From contig NC_043010.1 of NCBI RefSeq assembly GCF_006345805.1, forward strand, positions 63,364,001 to 63,428,000: a stretch of 64,000 nucleotides of DNA, written 5' to 3'. Position 1 is the stretch's first letter, and each line of letters opens with the position of its first letter. The notes below the pieces were generated by a model. It made no database searches. It saw nothing but the letters and a program-made list of their open reading frames with translations, and was not told where the DNA came from. The DNA comes from Octopus sinensis (lineage: Eukaryota). This document shows, piece after piece, positions 160 to 49,486 of the stretch. The position numbers and the translations under genes were made by a program.

Positions 160-531
160 GAGGCGCAATGGCCCAGTGGTTAGGGCAGCGGACTTGTGGT
201 CATAGGATCGCGGTTTCGATTCCCAGACCGGGCGTTGTGAGTGTTTATTGAGCGAAAACACCTAAAAGCTCCACGAGGCTCCGGCAGGGGATGGTGGTGA
301 TCCCTGCTGTACTCTTTTGCCACAACTTTCTCTTACTTCCTGTTTCTGTTGTACCTGTATTTCAAGGGGCCGGCCTTGTCACTTTCTGTGTCACGCTGAA
401 TATCCCCGAGAACTACGTTAAGGGTGCACGTGTCTGTGGAGTGCTCAGCCACTTACATGTTAATTTCACGAACAGGCTGTTCTGTTGATTCGGATCAACC
501 GGAACCCTCATCGTTGTAACCGACTGAGTAC
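160..531 (+). mobile_element. tRNA-derived SINE, family A (near full length)
   Basis: tRNA-like head with Pol III A/B-box-like motifs (GGCCCAGTGGTTAGG ... GGTTTCGATTCC). A second diverged copy is at 16304-16682, a tail fragment is near 21615-21790, and part of the head region recurs at about 47455-47504. Confidence 0.85.
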
Positions 532-629
532 TTCCAAAATCCAACCATGAAAACCATATCGAAATCACAATACAGAAATATAATCTTTTCTACTGTAGGT
601 AAAAGTCTTGAATTTTTTTTGTGTGTATG

Positions 630-916
630 TGGCCGATGCCAGCACCGCCTCGACTGGCTTCTGTGCCGGTGGCACATAAAAAGCACCAACTGATCGTGGC
701 CGATGCCAGACCTCTCTGGCACCTGTGCAGGTGGCACGTAAAAATCACCCACTACACTCGCGGAGTGGTTGGCGTTAGGAAGGGCATCCAGCTGTAGAAA
801 CACTGCCAGATCAGACTGGAGCCTGGAGCAGCCCCTGGCTCCCCAGACCCCGGTCAAACCGTCCAACCCATGCTAGCGCGGAAAACGGACGTTAAACGAT
901 GATGATGATGATGATG
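630..916 (-). mobile_element. Interspersed repeat family B (SINE-like, (GAT)n tail), with internal GTGGCACGTAAAAAGCACC subrepeats
   Basis: More than 10 copies in the window share TTTAACGTCCGTTTTCCATGCTAGCATGGGTTGGACGG...GGATGCCCTTCCTAACGCCAACCACTCC, adjacent to (CAT)n/(GAT)n. Confidence 0.85.
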
Positions 917-14886: not shown

Positions 14887-15259
14887 TATAATATATAAAT
14901 TAGAAAAAAACCACTATTAATATTAATATTAAGAGTGATTGTTTTGTTAAATAGTTTGATAATTAAATATTAGAGTATAACTAGGTTAAAGATATTCTAT
15001 AGTTTATTAATTTTTTTTTATTAAGCTAATTTATATCTTCACAGATAAATACATTTTTCTATCTATTTACTCTATTTTTTTACTGTAAATATTTAACATA
15101 ATAAATGTGTAGTAGGCAACTGGTCCTAATATTTTAAGTTTCAAATTTAGTTAATAGTCTTTCTTCTACAAGAAAAATCATTATTTTAATTATTTTATTT
15201 TTTGCAATAAATATTGTTTAAATCTATTTGTTTATTTAACTATTATTGTTATTATTGTT

Positions 15260-15359
15260 AACCTGAAGAGTGACTATAATTTTAAATTGAATTGATTTTT
15301 GATTAAATCTAATTTAATTGTAATTCCAATTTAATTATAGCCATGAAACATATGTAGTT
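15260..15359 (+). ncRNA. Type I hammerhead ribozyme motif (slightly diverged) in a Penelope-like remnant
   Basis: AAC-CTGAAGA-GTGACTATAATT..AATTATAGCCAT-GAAAC-ATAT-GTA-GTT: conserved core, 12-bp stem II with 1 mismatch and 1 G-U pair, palindromic stem III loop and GUA cleavage triplet. Confidence 0.7.
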
Positions 15360-15637
15360 TTTTTTTACTTATTATATATTGATTATTTATTTTTATACTT
15401 TTTGTGATCTAATTATATGTTTAAAAGAAAATTATATTAAGCTGGCGTGTGTAGAAGTAAAGCCTTACGGCAGGAACATAGATGATAAAGGTCATGGAAA
15501 GAAATATGATATATATATATATGTATATATGATTCTCTGTCTGAATAACTCCCCAATTCCTCCTCTAATACACTGAGCTCTCCACAAAATCATTCCAACT
15601 TTAATCTTTCTGTCAGCACCTCAAATGTAAGATTTCT

Positions 15638-29309: not shown

Positions 29310-29364
29310 GTATGTATAGGCAAGTGAAAATGTAAATCAAAATCAAAATCGATCAACATCAATG

Positions 29365-29733
29365 GAAATTGTAGCTGTGATACCAGTGCTGATGGCACGT
29401 AAGAGAACCATCCGAATGTGGACGGTGGCACGTAAAATGCACCATCCGACTGTGGCTGTTGCCAGCCTCGTCTGGCCCCTGTGCCGGTGGCATGTAAAAA
29501 GCACCATCCGATCGTGGCCGTTTGCCAGCCTCGTCTGGCACCTGTGCAGGTGGCACGTAAAAAGCACCCACTACACTCGCGGAGTGGTTGGCGTTAGGAA
29601 GGGCATCCAGCCGTAGAAACACTGCCAGATCAGACTGGGCCTGGCGCAGCCTTCTGGCTTCCCAGACCCCAGTTGAACCGTCCAACCCATGGAAAACGGG
29701 CATTAAACGATGATGATGATGATGATGATGATG
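29365..29733 (-). mobile_element. Family B repeat with expanded internal subrepeats
   Basis: Family B core plus about 4 GTGGCACGTAAAAAGCACC units. Confidence 0.85.
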
Positions 29734-29743
29734 TATATATAAA

Positions 29744-29973
29744 GGCGGGGAGCTGGCAGAACCGTTAGCATGCTGAGCGAAATGTGTAGCCGTATTTCGT
29801 CTGTCGTTACATTCCGAGTTCAAATTCCGCTGAGGTCGACTTTGCCTTTCATCCTTTCGGGGTCGATAAATTAAGTACCAGTTAAGCACTGGGGTCGATG
29901 TAACGACTTAATCCCTTTGTCTGTCCTTGTTTGTCCCCTCTGTGTTTAGCCCCTTGTGGGTAGTAAAGAAATA
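29744..29973 (+). mobile_element. SINE family D
   Basis: Colinear with the reverse complement of 25938-26168. Confidence 0.85.
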
Positions 29974-31200: not shown

Positions 31201-32504
31201 TCTGTGGATGAAGCTGGTAGATGGTTCACATGATGATCGGAAAGCAGTGGTAGAGTAGCAGGTGGGTGGTAGGTGGGCCAACTTGGGTAGAAAGGATGGA
31301 TACACTGGCCCATCTGGAGCAATACTGCCGTGCAACGTGAATAGGGAAGACTGAACTAAGACACAGGAACGTTGTCTTTGGTCACTGTCAGTGGGCAATA
31401 AACAAGGAAAGAATGACCATTAGGGGGTCAAAGGTGAACTGGAAGCTTAAGCAAAACCCTCAGCTCTTTCAGTACTGTTGTTATTTTTTTTGTTTTGTTA
31501 TGTTTTTTTTGTTTTGTTTTCAGATAAATGATTCCAGTTTATGTTTCTAAAGAAGAAAAAAAAAAGAAAAAATATAATGATAATGATGACGATGATGATA
31601 TCAAACAACTATAACCAAAACCAATAATAATGAAAGTAATAATGAGTTCTTAGTTAATTAAGAGAGAGCATGTTGAAGTTAATGAAGGATTATGAGCTAA
31701 TTAGAGAGCTTCTTTGCAGTCACTCAACCGGTCTTTTTCAAACCACAATCTTTTAAAAAATGGAAGAACACAATGGACAATGGAGTTCTGGATATATAAA
31801 CAGACAGGATGGTCATGGTTGGATTCTCTTGTATTTGTTTGATCAGGGATTAGCTGAGGATCAACGACAACATATTCTTTTAGTAATGGTTTCAAATTTT
31901 TGGCACAAGCCCAGCAGTTTTAGAGGATGGCAGTTTGTTGCTTACACTGACCCCAGGTTAAACTGGTAGTTTATTTTACTGACCCCAAAAGGGTGAAAAG
32001 CAAAGGTGACCTAGGCAGGATTTGAACCCAGAACATAAACAGTTGGAAGAAATGCTGCTAAGCATTTTGTCCAACAAGATTATGATTCTGCCATGACAAT
32101 AATAATAATAATAATAATAATACTTTCTACTATAGGCACAATGCCTGAAATTTGGGGGCATGGAACTAGTCAATTACACTGACCCCAACATTTCACTGGT
32201 ACTTAATTTATCGACCCCGAAATCTATCAAGGCAGCTGTTTTTCCTATCTCCAACTTTCACCTATTTCCAAACAAGGTAATACTTCTTCATGGCCGAACA
32301 TGTTTTCACGGAAGATTGGAAACAAAGGACACTGCTTGTGTGACGGTGCTGCTCATTTACAACTATCACATGACATCAAGATATGGAAATACTAATAACA
32401 CACACACACACACATGATGAGCTTCTTTCAACCAAATCCACTCACAAGATTTTAGTTGGCCCAGCGATATGGTAGCAGACACTATGAGGAGGGTGGGGCT
32501 GGGG

Positions 32505-40030: not shown

Positions 40031-40342
40031 AAAACATACAAAATTAAGAGGAATGACCACCAAAGTGGACTCCTAATATTTCGTATATTTTCATTTGTTT
40101 TGCTCATTTTTACATTTTGGCATTTTGCTGAAATTTTTCTTGAGAACACATTCTTCGGGGTAATGGTAATTTGAAGTCTATATTTAGCATATTAGGAGTC
40201 CACTTTGGTGGTCATTGCTCTTAATTTTCTATGTAATATAATTTTTAATCTTCAGATTTTTTAAATATTCTAAGCCACTGGTTTTAATTGATTAATATCA
40301 ATTTCTCTCCTCATTATTTAATTTATATATATGTGTGTGTGC

Positions 40343-40379
<37 letters not shown>

Positions 40380-40395
40380 TGATAATGCACACATG

Positions 40396-40441
<46 letters not shown>

Positions 40442-40457
40442 TGATAATGCACACATG

Positions 40458-40529
<72 letters not shown>

Positions 40530-41011
40530 CATACATACACACACAATGATACACACATGCACATATATATATATATATTATACACACACACATAAATATG
40601 TATACACACATATATGTGTGTATATAAAAGTAAAGGAATCTCCATCAATCTGCCTGTGAGTGTTTGAGCTGTTCAATCAAAGAAACAACCTTCTCCAATA
40701 ATTAGCATGTAAGTGGCTGAGTAACCACAGGCATGTGTAGCCTTAACATAATTCTTCACCAGAATCAACGTGACACAGACTCTGGACAAAGTTGACCCTT
40801 CAAATCACAGCAAAACCCTACACGACAGGCCTCAACACGTTTTAACCAACTGAATTTCACTCCTAGGGCTTGAGTCAACCGGAAAATCATTAGCCATAAT
40901 TGGCTGCAGAGACAAAAGAAAAAAAATAATTAGTGACAACTGCATAATTAGTGGTATCTTGGGCTAATGTCTCTGACTGAGAGCCTGCATGCATGCATTT
41001 AGGTATGTATG

Positions 41012-41068
<57 letters not shown>

Positions 41069-41381
41069 TAAAACATACAAAATTAAGAGGAATGACCACC
41101 AAAGTGGACTCCTAATATTTCGTATATTTTCATTTGTTTTGCTCATTTTTACATTTTGGCATTTTGCTGAAATTTTTCTTGAGAACACATTCTTCGGGGT
41201 AATGGTAATTTGAAGTCTATATTTAGCATATTAGGAGTCCACTTTGGTGGTCATTGCTCTTAATTTTCTATGTAATATAATTTTTAATCTTCAGATTTTT
41301 TAAATATTCTAAGCCACTGGTTTTAATTGATTAATATCAATTTCTCTCCTCATTATTTAATTTATATATATGTGTGTGTGC

Positions 41382-41418
<37 letters not shown>

Positions 41419-41434
41419 TGATAATGCACACATG

Positions 41435-41480
<46 letters not shown>

Positions 41481-41496
41481 TGATAATGCACACATG

Positions 41497-41568
<72 letters not shown>

Positions 41569-42052
41569 CATACATACACACACAATGATACACACATGCA
41601 CATATATATATATATATTTATACACACACACATAAATATGTATACACACATATATGTGTGTATATAAAAGTAAAGGAATCTCCATCAATCTGCCTGTGAG
41701 TGTTTGAGCTGTTCAATCAAAGAAACAACCTTCTCCAATAATTAGCATGTAAGTGGCTGAGTAACCCACAGGCATGTGTAGCCTTAACATAATTCTTCAC
41801 CAGAATCAACGTGACACAGACTCTGGACAAAGTTGACCCTTCAAATCACAGCAAAACCCTACACGACAGGCCTCAACACGTTTTAACCAACTGAATTTCA
41901 CTCCTAGGGCTTGAGTCAACCGGAAAATCATTAGCCATAATTGGCTGCAGAGACAAAAGAAAAAAAATAATTAGTGACAACTGCATAATTAGTGGTATCT
42001 TGGGCTAATGTCTCTGACTGAGAGCCTGCATGCATGCATTTAGGTATGTATG

Positions 42053-42107: not shown

Positions 42108-42635
42108 TATATATATGTATATATATATGTATATATATATATGTATATATATATATGTATATATATATGTATATATATATGTATATATATATGTATGTAT
42201 GTATGTATTATTCATAAATAAGAATGTTGGTGGCAGTAACTTTGAAGTTTTGGTCAGGTAAGCCATCACATCAGACGATGGCTTAGCTGGCCAAAATTTC
42301 AAAGTCACTGGCAACAAGATTCTTGTATAGAAATCATAAAATTGTACTCTACAAAAGTATAGAGTAACCCTTAAGATTAATGTAAAGTTGTTTTTATTAT
42401 AACTGAACATAAATAAATATATATTTATATATATATTTATAAGTACCAGTCGAGCATTGGGGTCAATGCAATCAATTTACCCCAATCCACGAGCTTACTG
42501 GCTTTATGCCAAACTTTGAAACCAGATATATATATATATAATAATAATAATAATAATTTGAGGGAATATTATTCCAAACTTACAGGGAAAAATTCAATTT
42601 AGAAATACTAAATCAAATTTCACAAAATATAATAA

Positions 42636-43128
42636 ATATAAATTAGAAAAAAACCACCTTTTATCAATTCAAAATGAAAAATTAAATTACACCATCTATA
42701 AAATTACATATAATAGAAATATTAAATATATGATAAAAAATATACCGATGATTAAGTAATGTGCAAAATAAAACGCATATATTTGGTAGAATAACGACAC
42801 GTGTTTCGTGGCTATATTTAAGAAATGATTATAGTAAAAATATTAGTAGTAGTAGTAAAATCACTTCAATATAAATATAGCCACTCATCAGGTTAAAAAT
42901 AACTACAACAATAAAATAATTAATTAATAAATATGCGTAAATAATCTTTTAAAATATAAATATATTCTTTAAAATAGATATCTGTATATCTATTATTTTG
43001 CACATTACTTAATCACCGGTATATTTTTTATCTTATATTTAATATTTCTTTTATATGTAATTTTATAGATGGTGTAATTCAATTTTTCATTTTGAATTGG
43101 TAAAAGGCGTTTTTTTTCTAATTTATAT
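42636..43128. mobile_element. Penelope-like/retrozyme-type non-autonomous element: about 135-bp inverted arms around a hammerhead
   Basis: 42636-42770 is the reverse complement of 42994-43128 with fewer than 10 mismatches. Flanked by TA/TAA repeats. The terminal motif ATAAATTAGAAAAAAACCAC is shared with 14896. Confidence 0.7.
42792..42895 (-). ncRNA. Type I hammerhead ribozyme with an intact core
   Basis: Minus strand: TAAC-CTGATGA-GTGGCTATATTTA..(51 nt)..TAAATATAGCCAC-GAAAC-ACGT-GTC-GTTA. Perfect 13-bp stem II, distal helix GAAGUGAUU/AAUCAUUUC, palindromic ACGU stem III loop, GUC triplet and 4-bp stem I. Confidence 0.85.
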
Positions 43129-43415
43129 ATATATACATACATATATATAGACACACATATGTGTATATATGTGTGTGTGTGTGTACCTATACACCATGCA
43201 TAAAGACAGGCAGGCAGTGCAAATACTCACACATTCAGCTGGAACAAGATATCCAGGAATATTGCTGTCCACCACAAAAGTACAGTAGACTCACAGTATT
43301 GACTGCCTTTCTCTCTCTCTCTCTTTCACATATACAGAAAAATGTCTGAATACTAGTTTGTCTAATGGTAAACACTGGCCGTCATTCATGCCAGACATTC
43401 GTTATCCTAAATGAA

Positions 43416-44751
43416 CTACTGAGGATTTTGTAAGCCAGTACTGGGGTACAAAATTGGCCAAAGAATCGTGCTCATCGGAGTGTATTCTTTGATGTTTTTA
43501 CAGGAAGGCGGCTTGAGAAAATTGTTTTTGGCAGGTAGCTTCTGGGGTCGTTTCATTAACTGCAAATCATCCATCTCTGTACAATGTGGTTTCGAACAGA
43601 TTTCAGTGTTTAATGGCATTTCAACGGAGTGAGGGCTCTGCTGAATGGGTAGACCTAATCTATTGGGTAAGTGCTGGGTGCAAACCTCGCAGTTGACAGC
43701 ATCATTGTGAATAATATGAATACGTTTATGTATTGTCAACTCATCCTTCTTCATAAACTGCTCGTAACAAATCTCACACTGGAAGGGTTTCTCTCCCGTA
43801 TGACCTCTCCGATGAATTTGCAATTTATCCTTGCGAGCAAACTGTTTGGGACAAATATCACAATGGAAAGGTTTTTCCCCAGTATGTGTCCGTATATGAA
43901 CCTTCAGATAATATCTCTGAGAGAAGTGCTTCGGACACAATTCACACTGGAATGGCTTCTCCCCCGTATGTGTGCGCTTATGGATCTGCAACTTATCTGA
44001 CCGAGCAAACTGCCGGGAACAGATGTCACAGTGATACGGTTTCTCTCCCGTGTGGGTCCGTTCGTGGATGAGCAATTTGTCTCTCTGGACGAATTGCTTT
44101 GGGCAGTAATTACAATTAAACAGTTTCTCACCTGTATGTGTCCGTCGATGCAACTGCAGCTTGTCACTCCGAGAGAACTGCTTCGGGCAGAACTCGCAAT
44201 GGAAAGGTTTCTCCCCCGTATGGATCCGTTCGTGGATTTTCAGTTTGTCTCGTTGCACAAAACATTTCGGACAATAACTACAATGATACGGTTTTTCTCC
44301 CGTGTGGGAGCTGTTGTGAATTTTCAACTTGTCTTTCCGAGAAAACTTCTTTGGGCAATATTCACACTGGAACGGTTTCTCCCCCGTGTGAATTCGCTCG
44401 TGGATCTGGAGTTTGTCTCGGTGGACGAATTTCTTTTCACAGAACGTACAATGAAACAGTTTCTCCCCCGTATGGATCCGTCTGTGCATTTCCAAAGTAT
44501 TTCGACGCACAAACTGCTTCGGGCAAAGGTCACAGTGATAGAGTTTGGAACACACTTGAGATTTTGAAGCAATAGGCATGGCCTTGCTTATGACTGGCTG
44601 CTTTTGACAAATAGGACCACTTTGAGACTGTTGCTGATGTTGTTGCTGCTGCTGCTGCAGCTGTAGATGTTGCTGATGCTGTGTCTGCTGTTGTTGAGGT
44701 GGTTGTTGTTGCTGCTGCTGCTGTGGCTGTTGTTGTTGTTGCTGCTGCTGT

Positions 44752-44789
<38 letters not shown>

Positions 44790-44793
44790 CTGT

Positions 44794-44840
<47 letters not shown>

Positions 44841-44851
44841 TTGCTGCTGCT

Positions 44852-44885
<34 letters not shown>

Positions 44886-45290
44886 CTGCTGCTGTTGTTG
44901 TTGTTGCTGCTGTTTCTCCCCCGTATGACTCCTTTCGTGAGTCGGTATGTAGCAGTTCTGTGACAGTTGTTTGTTGTAGACATCCACATGGAACAGCTTC
45001 TGGTTGTTGGTGACGAGCCCATGGGGCTGGAGGTAGCAGCCCTGCACAAACTGGCTGTCGTAGATGTTGTTGTGCAGGGGCTTCTCCCCAACATGAGCAA
45101 TCCTCTGTGACGTCATGGTGCTTGAGACAGAAGGAAATTGGGCTTTACTGCAAATATCTGCAGGGTTTAACTTAACACTGGAAAACTGAGACTTATTACA
45201 AACATCTCTGACCCCTGATTTGTCATTTGTGTATTGAGTTTTGCTACAAACATCCCCAGAAATACCCTTTTCTCTGTGAAGTTTCTCCAT
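43416..45290 (-). CDS. C2H2 (Kruppel-type) tandem zinc-finger protein, 624 aa, single coding exon, with a polyglutamine tract
   Basis: Uninterrupted ORF. Ten CxxC-x12-H-x3-H fingers joined by TGEK(P/L) linkers (43716-44540), 62 consecutive Gln codons, and degenerate fingers at both ends. A candidate acceptor TTCTCAG lies 20 nt upstream of the ATG (exon start 45310). Confidence 0.95.
44727..44912 (-). repeat. Mixed (CAG)n/(CAA)n coding repeat, 62 Gln
   Basis: Alternating blocks of CTG and TTG on the + strand, in frame within the zinc-finger ORF. Confidence 0.95.
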
Positions 45291-49364: not shown

Positions 49365-49486
49365 TAATACGGCCATATCACGTTGAAAGCACCGGTTCTC
49401 ATCTGATCACTGAAGTTAAGCAACGTCGAGCCTAGTGAGTAATTAGATGGGTGACCGCTTGGGAAACCTAGGTTCTGTAAGCGTTT
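49365..49486 (+). pseudogene. 5S rRNA pseudogene
   Basis: TACGGCCATATCACGTTGAAAGCACCGGTTCTCATCTGATCACTGAAGTTAAGCAACGTCGAGCC...GATGGGTGACCGCTTGGGAAACCTAGGTTCTGTAAGC has the eukaryotic 5S layout and length. The 5' helix I end is lost, apparent CpG-to-TpG/CpA changes are present, and it is a solitary copy. Confidence 0.88.

What the first reader, a model, noticed from the sequence alone, without database searches (positions are those of the whole stretch)
42792..42895. Intact hammerhead ribozyme in sense orientation just downstream of the zinc-finger stop codon
All core nucleotides are present (CUGAUGA, GAAA, GUC). Predicted cleavage is between 42796 and 42795, about 620 nt after the TAG at 43416, on the same strand as the gene. 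No canonical AATAAA occurs on that strand between the stop codon and the ribozyme; there is only an ATTAAA at 43038-43043, and the next AATAAA I found is at 42393-42398. The ribozyme could therefore lie in the 3' UTR and remove the poly(A) tail or define the 3' end, as shown for hammerheads in rodent Clec2 3' UTRs. The minimal stem III with a palindromic ACGU loop is the Penelope/retrozyme type that cleaves efficiently as a dimer, so activity might depend on transcript concentration or on trans pairing with other copies (inference).
Basis: partly seen in the sequence, partly recalled or inferred. Interest (0 to 1): 0.8.

Follow-up and report, generated by a model that had tools for sequence, protein, structure and literature searches.

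The report
Transposon-borne hammerhead ribozyme near octopus gene
The hammerhead ribozyme motif is real and intact, but it belongs to a repeated mobile element scattered through octopus genomes, so it is an ordinary retroelement-type ribozyme and not a device built to process the neighbouring zinc-finger mRNA.

Summary
On the minus strand, 42895->42792 carries a complete type I hammerhead: CUGAUGA, a 13-bp helix II, GAAA, a 2-bp helix III with a palindromic ACGU loop, and GUC|G. Cleavage is predicted between 42796 and 42795. A strict descriptor finds one such motif in the window, against 0.005 expected per shuffle.

The gene-centred interpretation is not supported. The ribozyme sits inside a ~575-nt repeat unit (43132->42558) with 140-nt inverted arms and a conserved 3' tail. 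The unit ends in (TTA)n(TA)n. A diverged second copy with an intact core lies at 15.3 kb on the other strand. Copies of the ribozyme or of its tail occur at three unrelated Octopus vulgaris loci. A second hammerhead family with the same design occurs at another place in one of those loci.

In three copies, homology starts or stops at the predicted cleavage site. This suggests that cleaved RNA was the transposition intermediate.

The architecture matches the hammerheads of Penelope-like elements and animal retrozymes. This copy is solitary, not tandem, and no reverse-transcriptase ORF was found among the long ORFs tested.

Whether the zinc-finger transcript reaches the ribozyme could not be tested.

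Verdict: a new member of a known kind, of modest interest.

The parts
42792..42895 (-). The distal helix I extends the motif to 42786-42906.
42885..42891 (-). Catalytic box CUGAUGA (C3-A9).
42808..42884 (-). Helix II domain. The 13-bp stem is 42884-42872 paired with 42820-42808. It closes a 51-nt insert that holds a 9-bp inner hairpin and an (ACU)n run.
   Evidence: (I14).
42796..42807 (-). GAAA box, helix III (A-U and C-G pairs with a palindromic ACGU loop) and the cleavage triplet GUC. The predicted cut is 3' of C17 (42796).
42896..42992 (-). Element sequence 5' of the ribozyme. The stretch from 42976 is shared at ~68% with the 15.3-kb copy.
42993..43132 (-). Inverted-repeat arm A, the reverse complement of part of the tail. 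Its outer end AAATTAGAAAAAAAAC abuts a (TA)n run. It contains the ATTAAA at 43038-43043.
   Evidence: (I1, 94%).
42632..42771 (-). Inverted-repeat arm A', part of the conserved 3' tail of the element.
42558..42631 (-). 3' extension of the tail, ending ...AATATTCCCTCAAA. It is conserved in L003 and L049 and partly in L048, which shows that the outer end of the arm is not the end of the element.
42526..42557 (-). (TTA)n(TA)n microsatellite that follows the tail. It is found after the tail in every copy seen.
15182..15388 (+). Diverged second copy of the ribozyme-bearing segment: CUGAAGA at 15263-15269, then GAAAC-AUAU-GUA with the predicted cut at 15356|15357. Helix II is weakened (a G.U and an A.C). 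There is no recognisable tail.
43416..45290 (-). Neighbouring C2H2 zinc-finger ORF with a polyQ tract (624 aa). It is context, not part of the element.
31539..31546 (-). End of the gene range on record: AAACATAA directly after a polypyrimidine-AG. I read this as the last coding exon of a shorter spliced isoform, in which case the ribozyme would be intronic in that isoform.
   Evidence: inference from the range only.

Best explanation
The motif is the self-cleaving ribozyme of a non-autonomous, AT-rich mobile element that is dispersed in Octopus genomes. The window holds one solitary, full-length unit of about 575 nt (43132->42558, minus strand). In order, the unit has a 5' end AAATTAGA... next to (TA)n, a 140-nt arm, a 97-nt spacer, the hammerhead, and a ~235-nt tail. 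The tail contains the complementary 140-nt arm and ends ...CCCTCAAA(TTA)n(TA)n. The ribozyme serves the element, not the gene. It cuts the element's transcript at GUC|G, probably most efficiently when two copies pair through the palindrome ACACGUGU. The processed RNA is then copied back into DNA by a reverse transcriptase supplied in trans, most likely from a Penelope-like element. Shown: the motif, its statistical significance, the repeat structure, the dispersed copies in two species, and the coincidence of copy boundaries with the cleavage site. Inferred: cleavage in vivo, RNA-mediated transposition, and the Penelope-like partner. This copy landed about 280 nt downstream of the zinc-finger stop codon by insertion. 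Any effect on that mRNA would be a by-product.
For: 1. The motif is significant and intact.
2. It is a repeat. A 73%-identical copy sits at 15232-15362 on the opposite strand, 27 kb away, with the core kept. The only core change is at the free position N7 (CUGAAGA). GAAA is kept, H17 changes C->A, and the loop changes ACGU->AUAU and stays palindromic.
3. O. vulgaris L049 carries the same core and helix II at 92% identity over 98 nt.
4. O. vulgaris L003, L049 and L048 carry the tail at 80-90% identity, at loci with unrelated genes.
5. Homology continues 75 nt beyond the outer end of the inverted arm in the three tail-bearing copies (partly in L048), and always ends in (TTA)n(TA)n.
6. Copy boundaries fall at the predicted cut. 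The L049 tail starts at CTCATCAG|GTTATTCTCCC, which is +1 to +4. The L003 tail starts within about 12 nt of +1. Homology in the 15.3-kb copy fades a few nt after GUA|.
7. A second hammerhead family in L048 (9107->9006) reads CUGAUGA, 11-bp helix II, GAAAC-AUAU-GUC|. It has the same design and is also flanked by inverted arms (62 nt) and TA repeats.
8. A long helix II, a short helix I, the G10.1-C11.1 pair and a palindromic 15.2-16.2 pair plus loop 3 are the published hallmarks of Penelope-like-element and metazoan type I hammerheads. Inverted partial copies and (TA)n targets are published hallmarks of Penelope-like insertions (PMC4209133; PMC8557442). Mollusc retrozymes with type I hammerheads are known (PMC7229834).
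9. The dimer is predicted to be favoured by ~6 kcal/mol through ACACGUGU.
Against: - No reverse-transcriptase/GIY-YIG ORF was found among seven of the long ORFs (>=150 aa) of the window that were scanned against Pfam. No autonomous partner sharing this ribozyme or tail was found, so the Penelope-like link rests on ribozyme type and insertion style only.
- The units are not in tandem, so the definition of an active retrozyme is not met.
- The unit is larger than described animal retrozymes (170-400 nt).
- Only about 210 kb of octopus DNA could be sampled. The boundary-at-cleavage-site pattern rests on three copies in AT-rich sequence where alignments are soft.
- The outer ~54 nt of the arm resemble the terminal inverted repeat of a short hairpin element in L048, which leaves room for a DNA-transposon component.
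- Rfam scores the motif below threshold.
- No cleavage or expression data exist.
Confidence: 0.75

Rival explanations
1. One reading: the ribozyme lies in the zinc-finger 3' UTR and has been co-opted to cut off the poly(A) tail or define the mRNA 3' end, as in rodent Clec2 genes. Its activity would be tuned by dimerisation.
For: The ribozyme has the same strand as the gene and lies 620 nt after the stop codon. There is no AATAAA in between. The gene range on record spans the site, so sense transcripts may contain it. The core is intact.
Against: The ribozyme is one copy of a dispersed repeat found at unrelated loci and on either strand. The ATTAAA at 43038-43043, upstream of the ribozyme, could end the mRNA before it is reached. 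Helix III is minimal and there is no partner copy within 27 kb, so fast cleavage in cis is unlikely; published single min-hammerheads cleave poorly (PMC4209133). No homologous flank or hammerhead was seen next to the best Argonauta match to the protein, although orthology there is unproven.
Confidence: 0.06
2. The unit is a foldback or MITE-type DNA transposon, delimited by its 140-nt terminal inverted repeats and moved by a transposase. It merely carries a hammerhead as cargo.
For: The arms are 140 nt and 94% complementary. The RNA or DNA hairpin is extremely stable (-221.8 kcal/mol, z = -21). The outer arm end resembles the inverted termini of a ~170-nt hairpin element in L048, and a fragment of it is in L051. 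All copies lie in TA-rich sites. The family B element in L048 appears to be bounded by its 62-nt arms.
Against: In the three tail-bearing copies from O. vulgaris (partly in L048), homology runs 75 nt past the arm end to a common ...CCCTCAAA(TTA)n terminus. L003 and L049 have one arm only and look 5'-truncated, which is typical of reverse transcription. Boundaries coincide with the RNA cleavage site.
Confidence: 0.1
3. This particular copy is an inert relic. The motif is real by descent, but as a solitary monomer with a 2-bp helix III and a weak helix I it never cleaves to any meaningful extent and has no role for element or host.
For: The copy is solitary. Helix I is 4+4 bp with no recognisable loop-loop contacts. 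The monomeric hammerhead fold is worth only -12.8 kcal/mol, against an MFE of -27.7. Published single min-hammerheads are inactive or slow (PMC4209133; PMC7229834). The 15.3-kb copy already shows decay in helix II.
Against: All 15 core positions and the G10.1-C11.1 pair are intact, and the arms are still 94% matched, so the copy is young or constrained. Two-base-pair helix III with a tetraloop is the form called typical of invertebrate hammerheads, whose retrozyme ribozymes are reported to self-cleave efficiently. The copy boundaries at the cut site suggest that relatives did cleave.
Confidence: 0.3

Closest known systems
Hammerheads of Penelope-like elements (min-HHR / small palindromic helix III variants; Cervera & de la Pena 2014, PMC4209133)
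   Same: Type I topology, helix II much longer than the canonical 4 bp, a short helix I without a defined loop 1, the G10.1-C11.1 pair, and a palindromic 15.2-16.2 pair plus loop 3 that allows a dimer. The hammerheads are mostly scattered single motifs. Inverted partial copies and (TA)n insertion sites are typical of Penelope-like insertions (PMC8557442).
   Different: No pseudo-LTR/RT-GIY-YIG context was found. There is no unpaired nucleotide between A9 and 10.1. Helix II is exceptionally long (13 bp closing a 51-nt insert). The unit has its own conserved 3' tail ending in (TTA)n.
Animal non-LTR retrozymes (Cervera & de la Pena 2020, PMC7229834; Li et al. 2026 preprint, 10.64898/2026.07.22.740005)
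   Same: Non-coding, AT-rich units with one type I hammerhead and highly self-paired predicted RNA. They are known in molluscs (mussel, ~5000 copies). Solo monomers are reported alongside tandem arrays. They are proposed to be non-autonomous derivatives of Penelope-like elements.
   Different: Retrozymes are defined by tandem units of 170-400 nt that yield circRNAs. Here the unit is ~575 nt and solitary, and no circRNA evidence is available.
Sm-alpha SINE-like elements of Schistosoma (Ferbeyre et al. 1998; recalled from knowledge and cited within PMC4209133)
   Same: A short, dispersed, non-coding retroposon-like repeat that carries a type I hammerhead.
   Different: An unrelated sequence and a different phylum. 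Sm-alpha hammerheads have the canonical 6-bp helix I and 4-bp helix II with loop-loop contacts.
Discontinuous hammerhead in rodent Clec2 3' UTRs (Martick et al. 2008; recalled from knowledge)
   Same: A hammerhead in sense orientation downstream of a stop codon, and a large insertion within the motif.
   Different: The Clec2 ribozyme is gene-specific, conserved at orthologous loci and shown to lower expression. The octopus motif is a copy of a dispersed repeat, with no evidence of conservation at this locus or of an effect on the mRNA.

Membership tests
Hammerhead ribozyme, type I | Conserved core: C3 U4 G5 A6 N7 G8 A9, G12 A13 A14, the A15.1-U16.1 pair, and H17 (not G). | tested here: met
   CUGAUGA at 42891-42885, GAAA at 42807-42804, the A-U and C-G pairs of helix III, and C17 at 42796.
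Hammerhead ribozyme, type I | Three helices around the core, with helix I open-ended. | tested here: met
   Helix I is 4 bp + 4 bp, helix II is 13 bp, and helix III is 2 bp with a tetraloop. The 5' and 3' ends lie in helix I.
Hammerhead ribozyme, type I | Score at or above the Rfam RF00163 gathering threshold. | tested here: not met
   13.9 bits against 34, E=1.2, and seen only on a 151-nt slice. There was no hit. The Rfam threshold is a curation cut-off, not a biochemical criterion.
Hammerhead ribozyme, type I | Site-specific self-cleavage that gives 2',3'-cyclic phosphate and 5'-OH ends. | not testable with these tools
   The only evidence is indirect: three family copies begin or end at the predicted site.
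Penelope-like-element hammerhead | Long helix II, short helix I, and minimal helix III with a palindromic 15.2-16.2 pair and loop 3 (dimer-competent). | tested here: met
   compared with PMC4209133. The palindrome is kept in the 15.3-kb copy (ACGU->AUAU), although CpG decay could also give this change.
Penelope-like-element hammerhead | Location in a pseudo-LTR flanking an RT + GIY-YIG ORF. | tested here: inconclusive
   Seven of the 16 window ORFs >=150 aa were scanned and none hit a Pfam family. No such ORF is seen beside the O. vulgaris copies in the called-gene tables. Most published motifs are also solo, and the genome could not be searched.
Penelope-like-element hammerhead | Insertion signature: 5' truncation, inverted partial copy, microsatellite (TA)n target. 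| tested here: met
   There is an inverted 140-nt copy of part of the tail upstream of the ribozyme. L003 and L049 are truncated. (TA)n lies at both ends in every copy. These features are suggestive, not exclusive to Penelope-like elements.
Animal non-LTR retrozyme | At least two tandem units, each with a type I hammerhead. | tested here: not met
   No tandem repeat of the unit was found. Self-BLAST shows only the inverted arm and the distant 15.3-kb copy.
Animal non-LTR retrozyme | Expression as linear and circular RNA of unit length. | not testable with these tools
   No transcript data could be reached. Look-ups of small ORFs from the region found no contigs.
Clec2-type 3' UTR regulatory hammerhead | Gene-specific motif conserved at orthologous loci and located within the mature 3' UTR. 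| tested here: inconclusive
   The motif belongs to a dispersed repeat. No ortholog of the protein was retrievable. The Argonauta best-match locus has no hammerhead or flank homology. The extent of the UTR is unknown.
MITE / foldback DNA transposon | Copies bounded by the terminal inverted repeats, with unrelated flanks. | tested here: not met
   Homology continues 75 nt beyond the arm end to a shared 3' terminus in L003 and L049, and partly in L048.

The most novel reading that the evidence does not exclude
Cephalopods may harbour an undescribed, abundant family of ~0.6-kb hammerhead-bearing retroelements. In this reading their genomic copy boundaries record ribozyme cleavage in vivo, and their 140-bp self-complementary rod could make unit-length circular RNAs. 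This particular sense-strand copy, lying inside the zinc-finger transcription unit, would have been co-opted to cut read-through transcripts and so bias the choice between the 624-aa isoform and the downstream-spliced isoform.
Probability: 0.05. Interest if true: 0.7.

Novelty: new member of a known kind. Interest (0 to 1): 0.25.

Why it matters
Type I hammerheads in animal retroelements are well documented, by the thousands per genome. One more copy next to a gene is not surprising, and the finding should not be read as a new mode of mRNA 3'-end formation.

Three points have modest value.
- The literature searches found no description of such hammerheads in cephalopods.
- The helix II domain is unusually large and the unit carries long inverted arms.
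- Several copies start or stop at the predicted cut. If confirmed genome-wide, that would be in vivo evidence of the kind a study of an Anolis Penelope-like element did not find in RNA-seq reads (PMC11167929).

If the element is transcribed within the gene, its 140-bp duplex is the kind of long double-stranded RNA that ADAR editing and small-RNA pathways are known to act on. Cephalopods are noted for extensive RNA editing. This link is drawn from general knowledge and was not tested here.

Tried and rejected
- Rfam at gathering score on the whole window, and at E<=10 on 1.1 kb, gave no hammerhead. Only a narrow slice gave a sub-threshold type I hit. The microRNA-like hits are artefacts of TA/TG microsatellites and long hairpins.
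- One scan each of the metagenome and prokaryote-genome collections with AACCTGANGAGTGRCTATA returned 35 and 8 loci. All are chance matches inside bacterial coding sequence, with no hammerhead downstream.
- A viral-contig scan with a tail 23-mer found nothing.
- Three protein searches did not retrieve an ortholog. The full zinc-finger protein was swamped by generic C2H2 proteins. Its unique N- and C-terminal parts gave no hit. The exact sequence is absent from the cluster collection.
- Looking up small ORFs from the 3' region, in the hope of reaching RNA-seq contigs, failed.
- The third protein search used a repeat-derived ORF only to harvest O. vulgaris loci. That worked: six loci.
- The Logan contig L002 has only 95 nt after its stop codon and was uninformative.
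- The Argonauta locus L053 showed nothing, but orthology is unproven.
- No text supplements are held for PMC8557442, so octopus Penelope-like consensus sequences could not be compared.
- The MITE reading was considered and rejected, because homology passes the arm end.
- The chance-motif reading was rejected on the shuffle test and on the existence of related copies.

Full report
**Source and context.** The window matches Octopus sinensis chromosome CM016872.1 (GCA_006345805.1). The minus strand carries a 624-aa ORF (45290->43416) with a long polyQ tract and an array of C2H2 zinc fingers.

**The observation.** Reading the minus strand from 42906 to 42786 gives GUAG-UUAUUU-UAAC-CUGAUGA-GUGGCUAUAUUUA-[51 nt]-UAAAUAUAGCCAC-GAAA-C-ACGU-G-U-C|GUUA-UU-CUAC. 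Every invariant hammerhead position is present.
- Helix II starts with the conserved G10.1-C11.1 pair and runs 13 bp (I14, 5, 6).
- Helix III is A-U plus C-G capped by ACGU.
- Helix I is open-ended, which makes the motif type I. It has 4 bp next to the core and a further GUAG/CUAC helix beyond an internal loop.

A descriptor demanding both core boxes, helix II >=4 bp, two helix III pairs, H17 and helix I >=3 bp finds only this site on both strands of the 64 kb. In 200 dinucleotide-preserving shuffles it averaged 0.005 hits, and none had helix II >=8 bp.

Rfam misses the motif at its curated threshold. On a 151-nt slice it gives Hammerhead_1 only 13.9 bits against 34. I attribute this to the 77-nt helix II domain and the minimal helix III.

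**What surrounds it.** The ribozyme sits in the 221-nt centre of a 140-nt inverted repeat, 42993-43132 against 42632-771, 94% complementary.

A transcript of 43135->42558 folds to -221.8 kcal/mol (z = -21). It forms a ~140-bp duplex, with helix II and the distal helix I still formed at its tip.

The unit is flanked by (TA)n on its 5' side and by (TTA)n(TA)n on its 3' side. There is no tandem repetition of the unit.

**It is a repeat family.**
- *Second copy in the window.* Self-comparison finds a second copy at 15232-15362 on the other strand (73% identity), extendable to 15182-15388. Its core is CUGAAGA, which differs only at the free position N7. GAAA is kept, the cleavage triplet is GUA, and the loop is AUAU, still palindromic. 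Helix II has acquired a G.U and an A.C. The ACGU->AUAU change keeps dimer pairing but is also what two CpG deaminations would give, so it is weak covariation evidence.
- *Sampling O. vulgaris.* I had no way to search octopus genomes directly. I fetched seven O. vulgaris loci (145 kb) through unrelated proteins.
- *L049* has the same core and helix II (92% over 98 nt), and separately the whole tail.
- *L003* has the tail alone (90% over 252 nt).
- *L048* has the last 95 nt of the tail.
- *A second hammerhead family in L048.* At 9107->9006 it reads CUGAUGA, 11-bp helix II, GAAAC-AUAU-GUC|GAG. It is also enclosed by inverted arms (62 nt) and TA repeats, and the whole 240 nt is quasi-palindromic.
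- *Recurring 5' terminus.* The sequence AAATTAGA(A/G)...AAAACCAC next to (TA)n recurs at window 43132 and 14886, at L048 11183 and at L051 18795.
- *Density.* This is roughly one hammerhead per 50 kb in the ~210 kb sampled. That is a very rough figure, but it is in line with the thousands of copies reported for other animals.

**Where the units begin and end.** In L003 and L049, and partly in L048, homology runs 75 nt beyond the outer end of the inverted arm. It reaches a shared ...AATATTCCCTCAAA terminus followed by (TTA)n(TA)n. The arm end is therefore not the element end, which argues against a transposon bounded by terminal inverted repeats.

L003 and L049 lack the upstream arm, as 5'-truncated retro-copies would. 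Their 5' limits are informative.
- In L049 the tail begins at CTCATCAG|GTTATTCTCCC, that is at +1 to +4 of the predicted cut. It abuts an inverted copy of the ribozyme's 5' part.
- In L003, secure homology begins within about 12 nt of +1.
- In the opposite direction, homology in the 15.3-kb copy fades within a few nucleotides after GUA| and no tail follows.

So three boundaries fall at one 12-nt spot of a 575-nt unit. This is what one expects if hammerhead-cleaved RNAs were the templates. With three AT-rich examples I treat it as suggestive only.

**Mechanism.** Co-folding two copies of the ribozyme gives -61.3 kcal/mol against -55.4 for two monomers, with an 8-bp intermolecular ACACGUGU helix. 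This is the extended helix III of the dimeric hammerhead.

Published work shows that hammerheads with a 1-2 bp helix III and a palindromic loop cleave poorly alone and better as dimers. It also shows that they are characteristic of Penelope-like elements and of animal retrozymes, and that Penelope-like insertions are typically 5'-truncated, carry inverted partial copies and favour microsatellites.

The octopus unit shares all of these traits. I therefore commit to a non-autonomous retroelement whose ribozyme processes its own transcript, mobilised in trans, most probably by a Penelope-like element.

Not shown:
- cleavage itself;
- an autonomous partner (seven of the window's long ORFs gave no Pfam hit);
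- tandem or circular forms.

**The gene-centred idea.** The gene range on record runs from the ATG (45290) to a TAA at 31539. That TAA directly follows a polypyrimidine-AG acceptor. I read this as a shorter, spliced isoform. If it is real, the ribozyme lies in an intron of that isoform and downstream of the stop codon of the 624-aa isoform, in sense orientation.

Exposure in pre-mRNA is therefore plausible. Nothing indicates selection for it:
- the motif is a transposon copy;
- the nearest upstream poly(A)-like hexamer, ATTAAA at 43038-43043, lies inside the transposon's own arm and would end the mRNA before the ribozyme;
- the closest other copy is 27 kb away on the opposite strand, so a cis dimer cannot form.

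No ortholog could be retrieved to test conservation. The best Argonauta match shows no related flank.

**Verdict.** The motif is a new member of a known kind, of modest interest. The one lead worth following is the apparent cleavage-site footprint in copy boundaries.

Noticed in passing
window 49365-49483 (+): A full-length 5S rRNA match (RF00001, 91.4 bits, E 2e-18), about 4 kb upstream of the zinc-finger ATG. I did not determine whether it is a functional 5S gene, part of an array, or a 5S-derived repeat.
   Followed up: no
L048 9215-8965 (-), O. vulgaris OX597836.1: A second, unrelated-sequence hammerhead family: CUGAUGA, 11-bp helix II, GAAAC-AUAU-GUC|GAG. It lies in a ~240-nt quasi-palindromic unit with 62-nt inverted arms, flanked by TA repeats. 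An alternative hairpin would sequester the CUGAUGA box.
   Followed up: partly
L049 4031-4160 (-) and 4150-4419 (+), O. vulgaris OX597840.1: A rearranged family copy. The ribozyme's 5' part and helix II are inverted relative to the tail and joined to it exactly at the position of the cleavage site. On its own strand the sequence after GAAACA is unrelated, so this copy has no cleavage site.
   Followed up: partly
L048 11183-11015 (-); L051 18763-18809: A ~170-nt hairpin element with ~38-nt inverted termini (TTAAATTAGAGATAAAACCACTATTAGGCAAATCAAAC). These termini resemble the outer 54 nt of the window element's arm (80%). In L048 it is followed by a tail-like ...CCCT(ATT)n end. It may be a hammerhead-less relative of the same family.
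   Followed up: partly
window 42632-43132: If transcribed within the gene, the two 140-nt arms would form a near-perfect 140-bp RNA duplex. From general knowledge, long RNA duplexes are substrates for ADAR editing and Dicer, and cephalopods are noted for extensive RNA editing.
   Followed up: no
window 31539-31550 (-): The gene range on record ends at a TAA that directly follows a ttttcttctttag acceptor. This implies an annotated isoform that splices from the zinc-finger exon region to a tiny terminal coding exon 11.9 kb downstream.
   Followed up: partly
window ~44640-44915 (-): A very long glutamine run (about 90 residues, CAG/CAA) sits between the N-terminal region and the C2H2 array of the zinc-finger ORF. 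The exact protein is absent from the 15-billion-sequence cluster collection.
   Followed up: no
window 495-866 (-) and 29359-29889 (-): Two copies of a repeat whose spurious ORFs share a peptide (...[33 protein letters not shown]...). Six O. vulgaris 'hypothetical predicted proteins' of 103-167 aa match it. These look like repeat-derived annotation artefacts.
   Followed up: partly
window ~40320-40545 and ~41360-41585: Microsatellite-rich sequence is duplicated at a constant offset of 1039 bp. Paired BLAST hits include 40524/41563, 40365/41404 and 40413/41452. This suggests a ~1-kb direct duplication.
   Followed up: no
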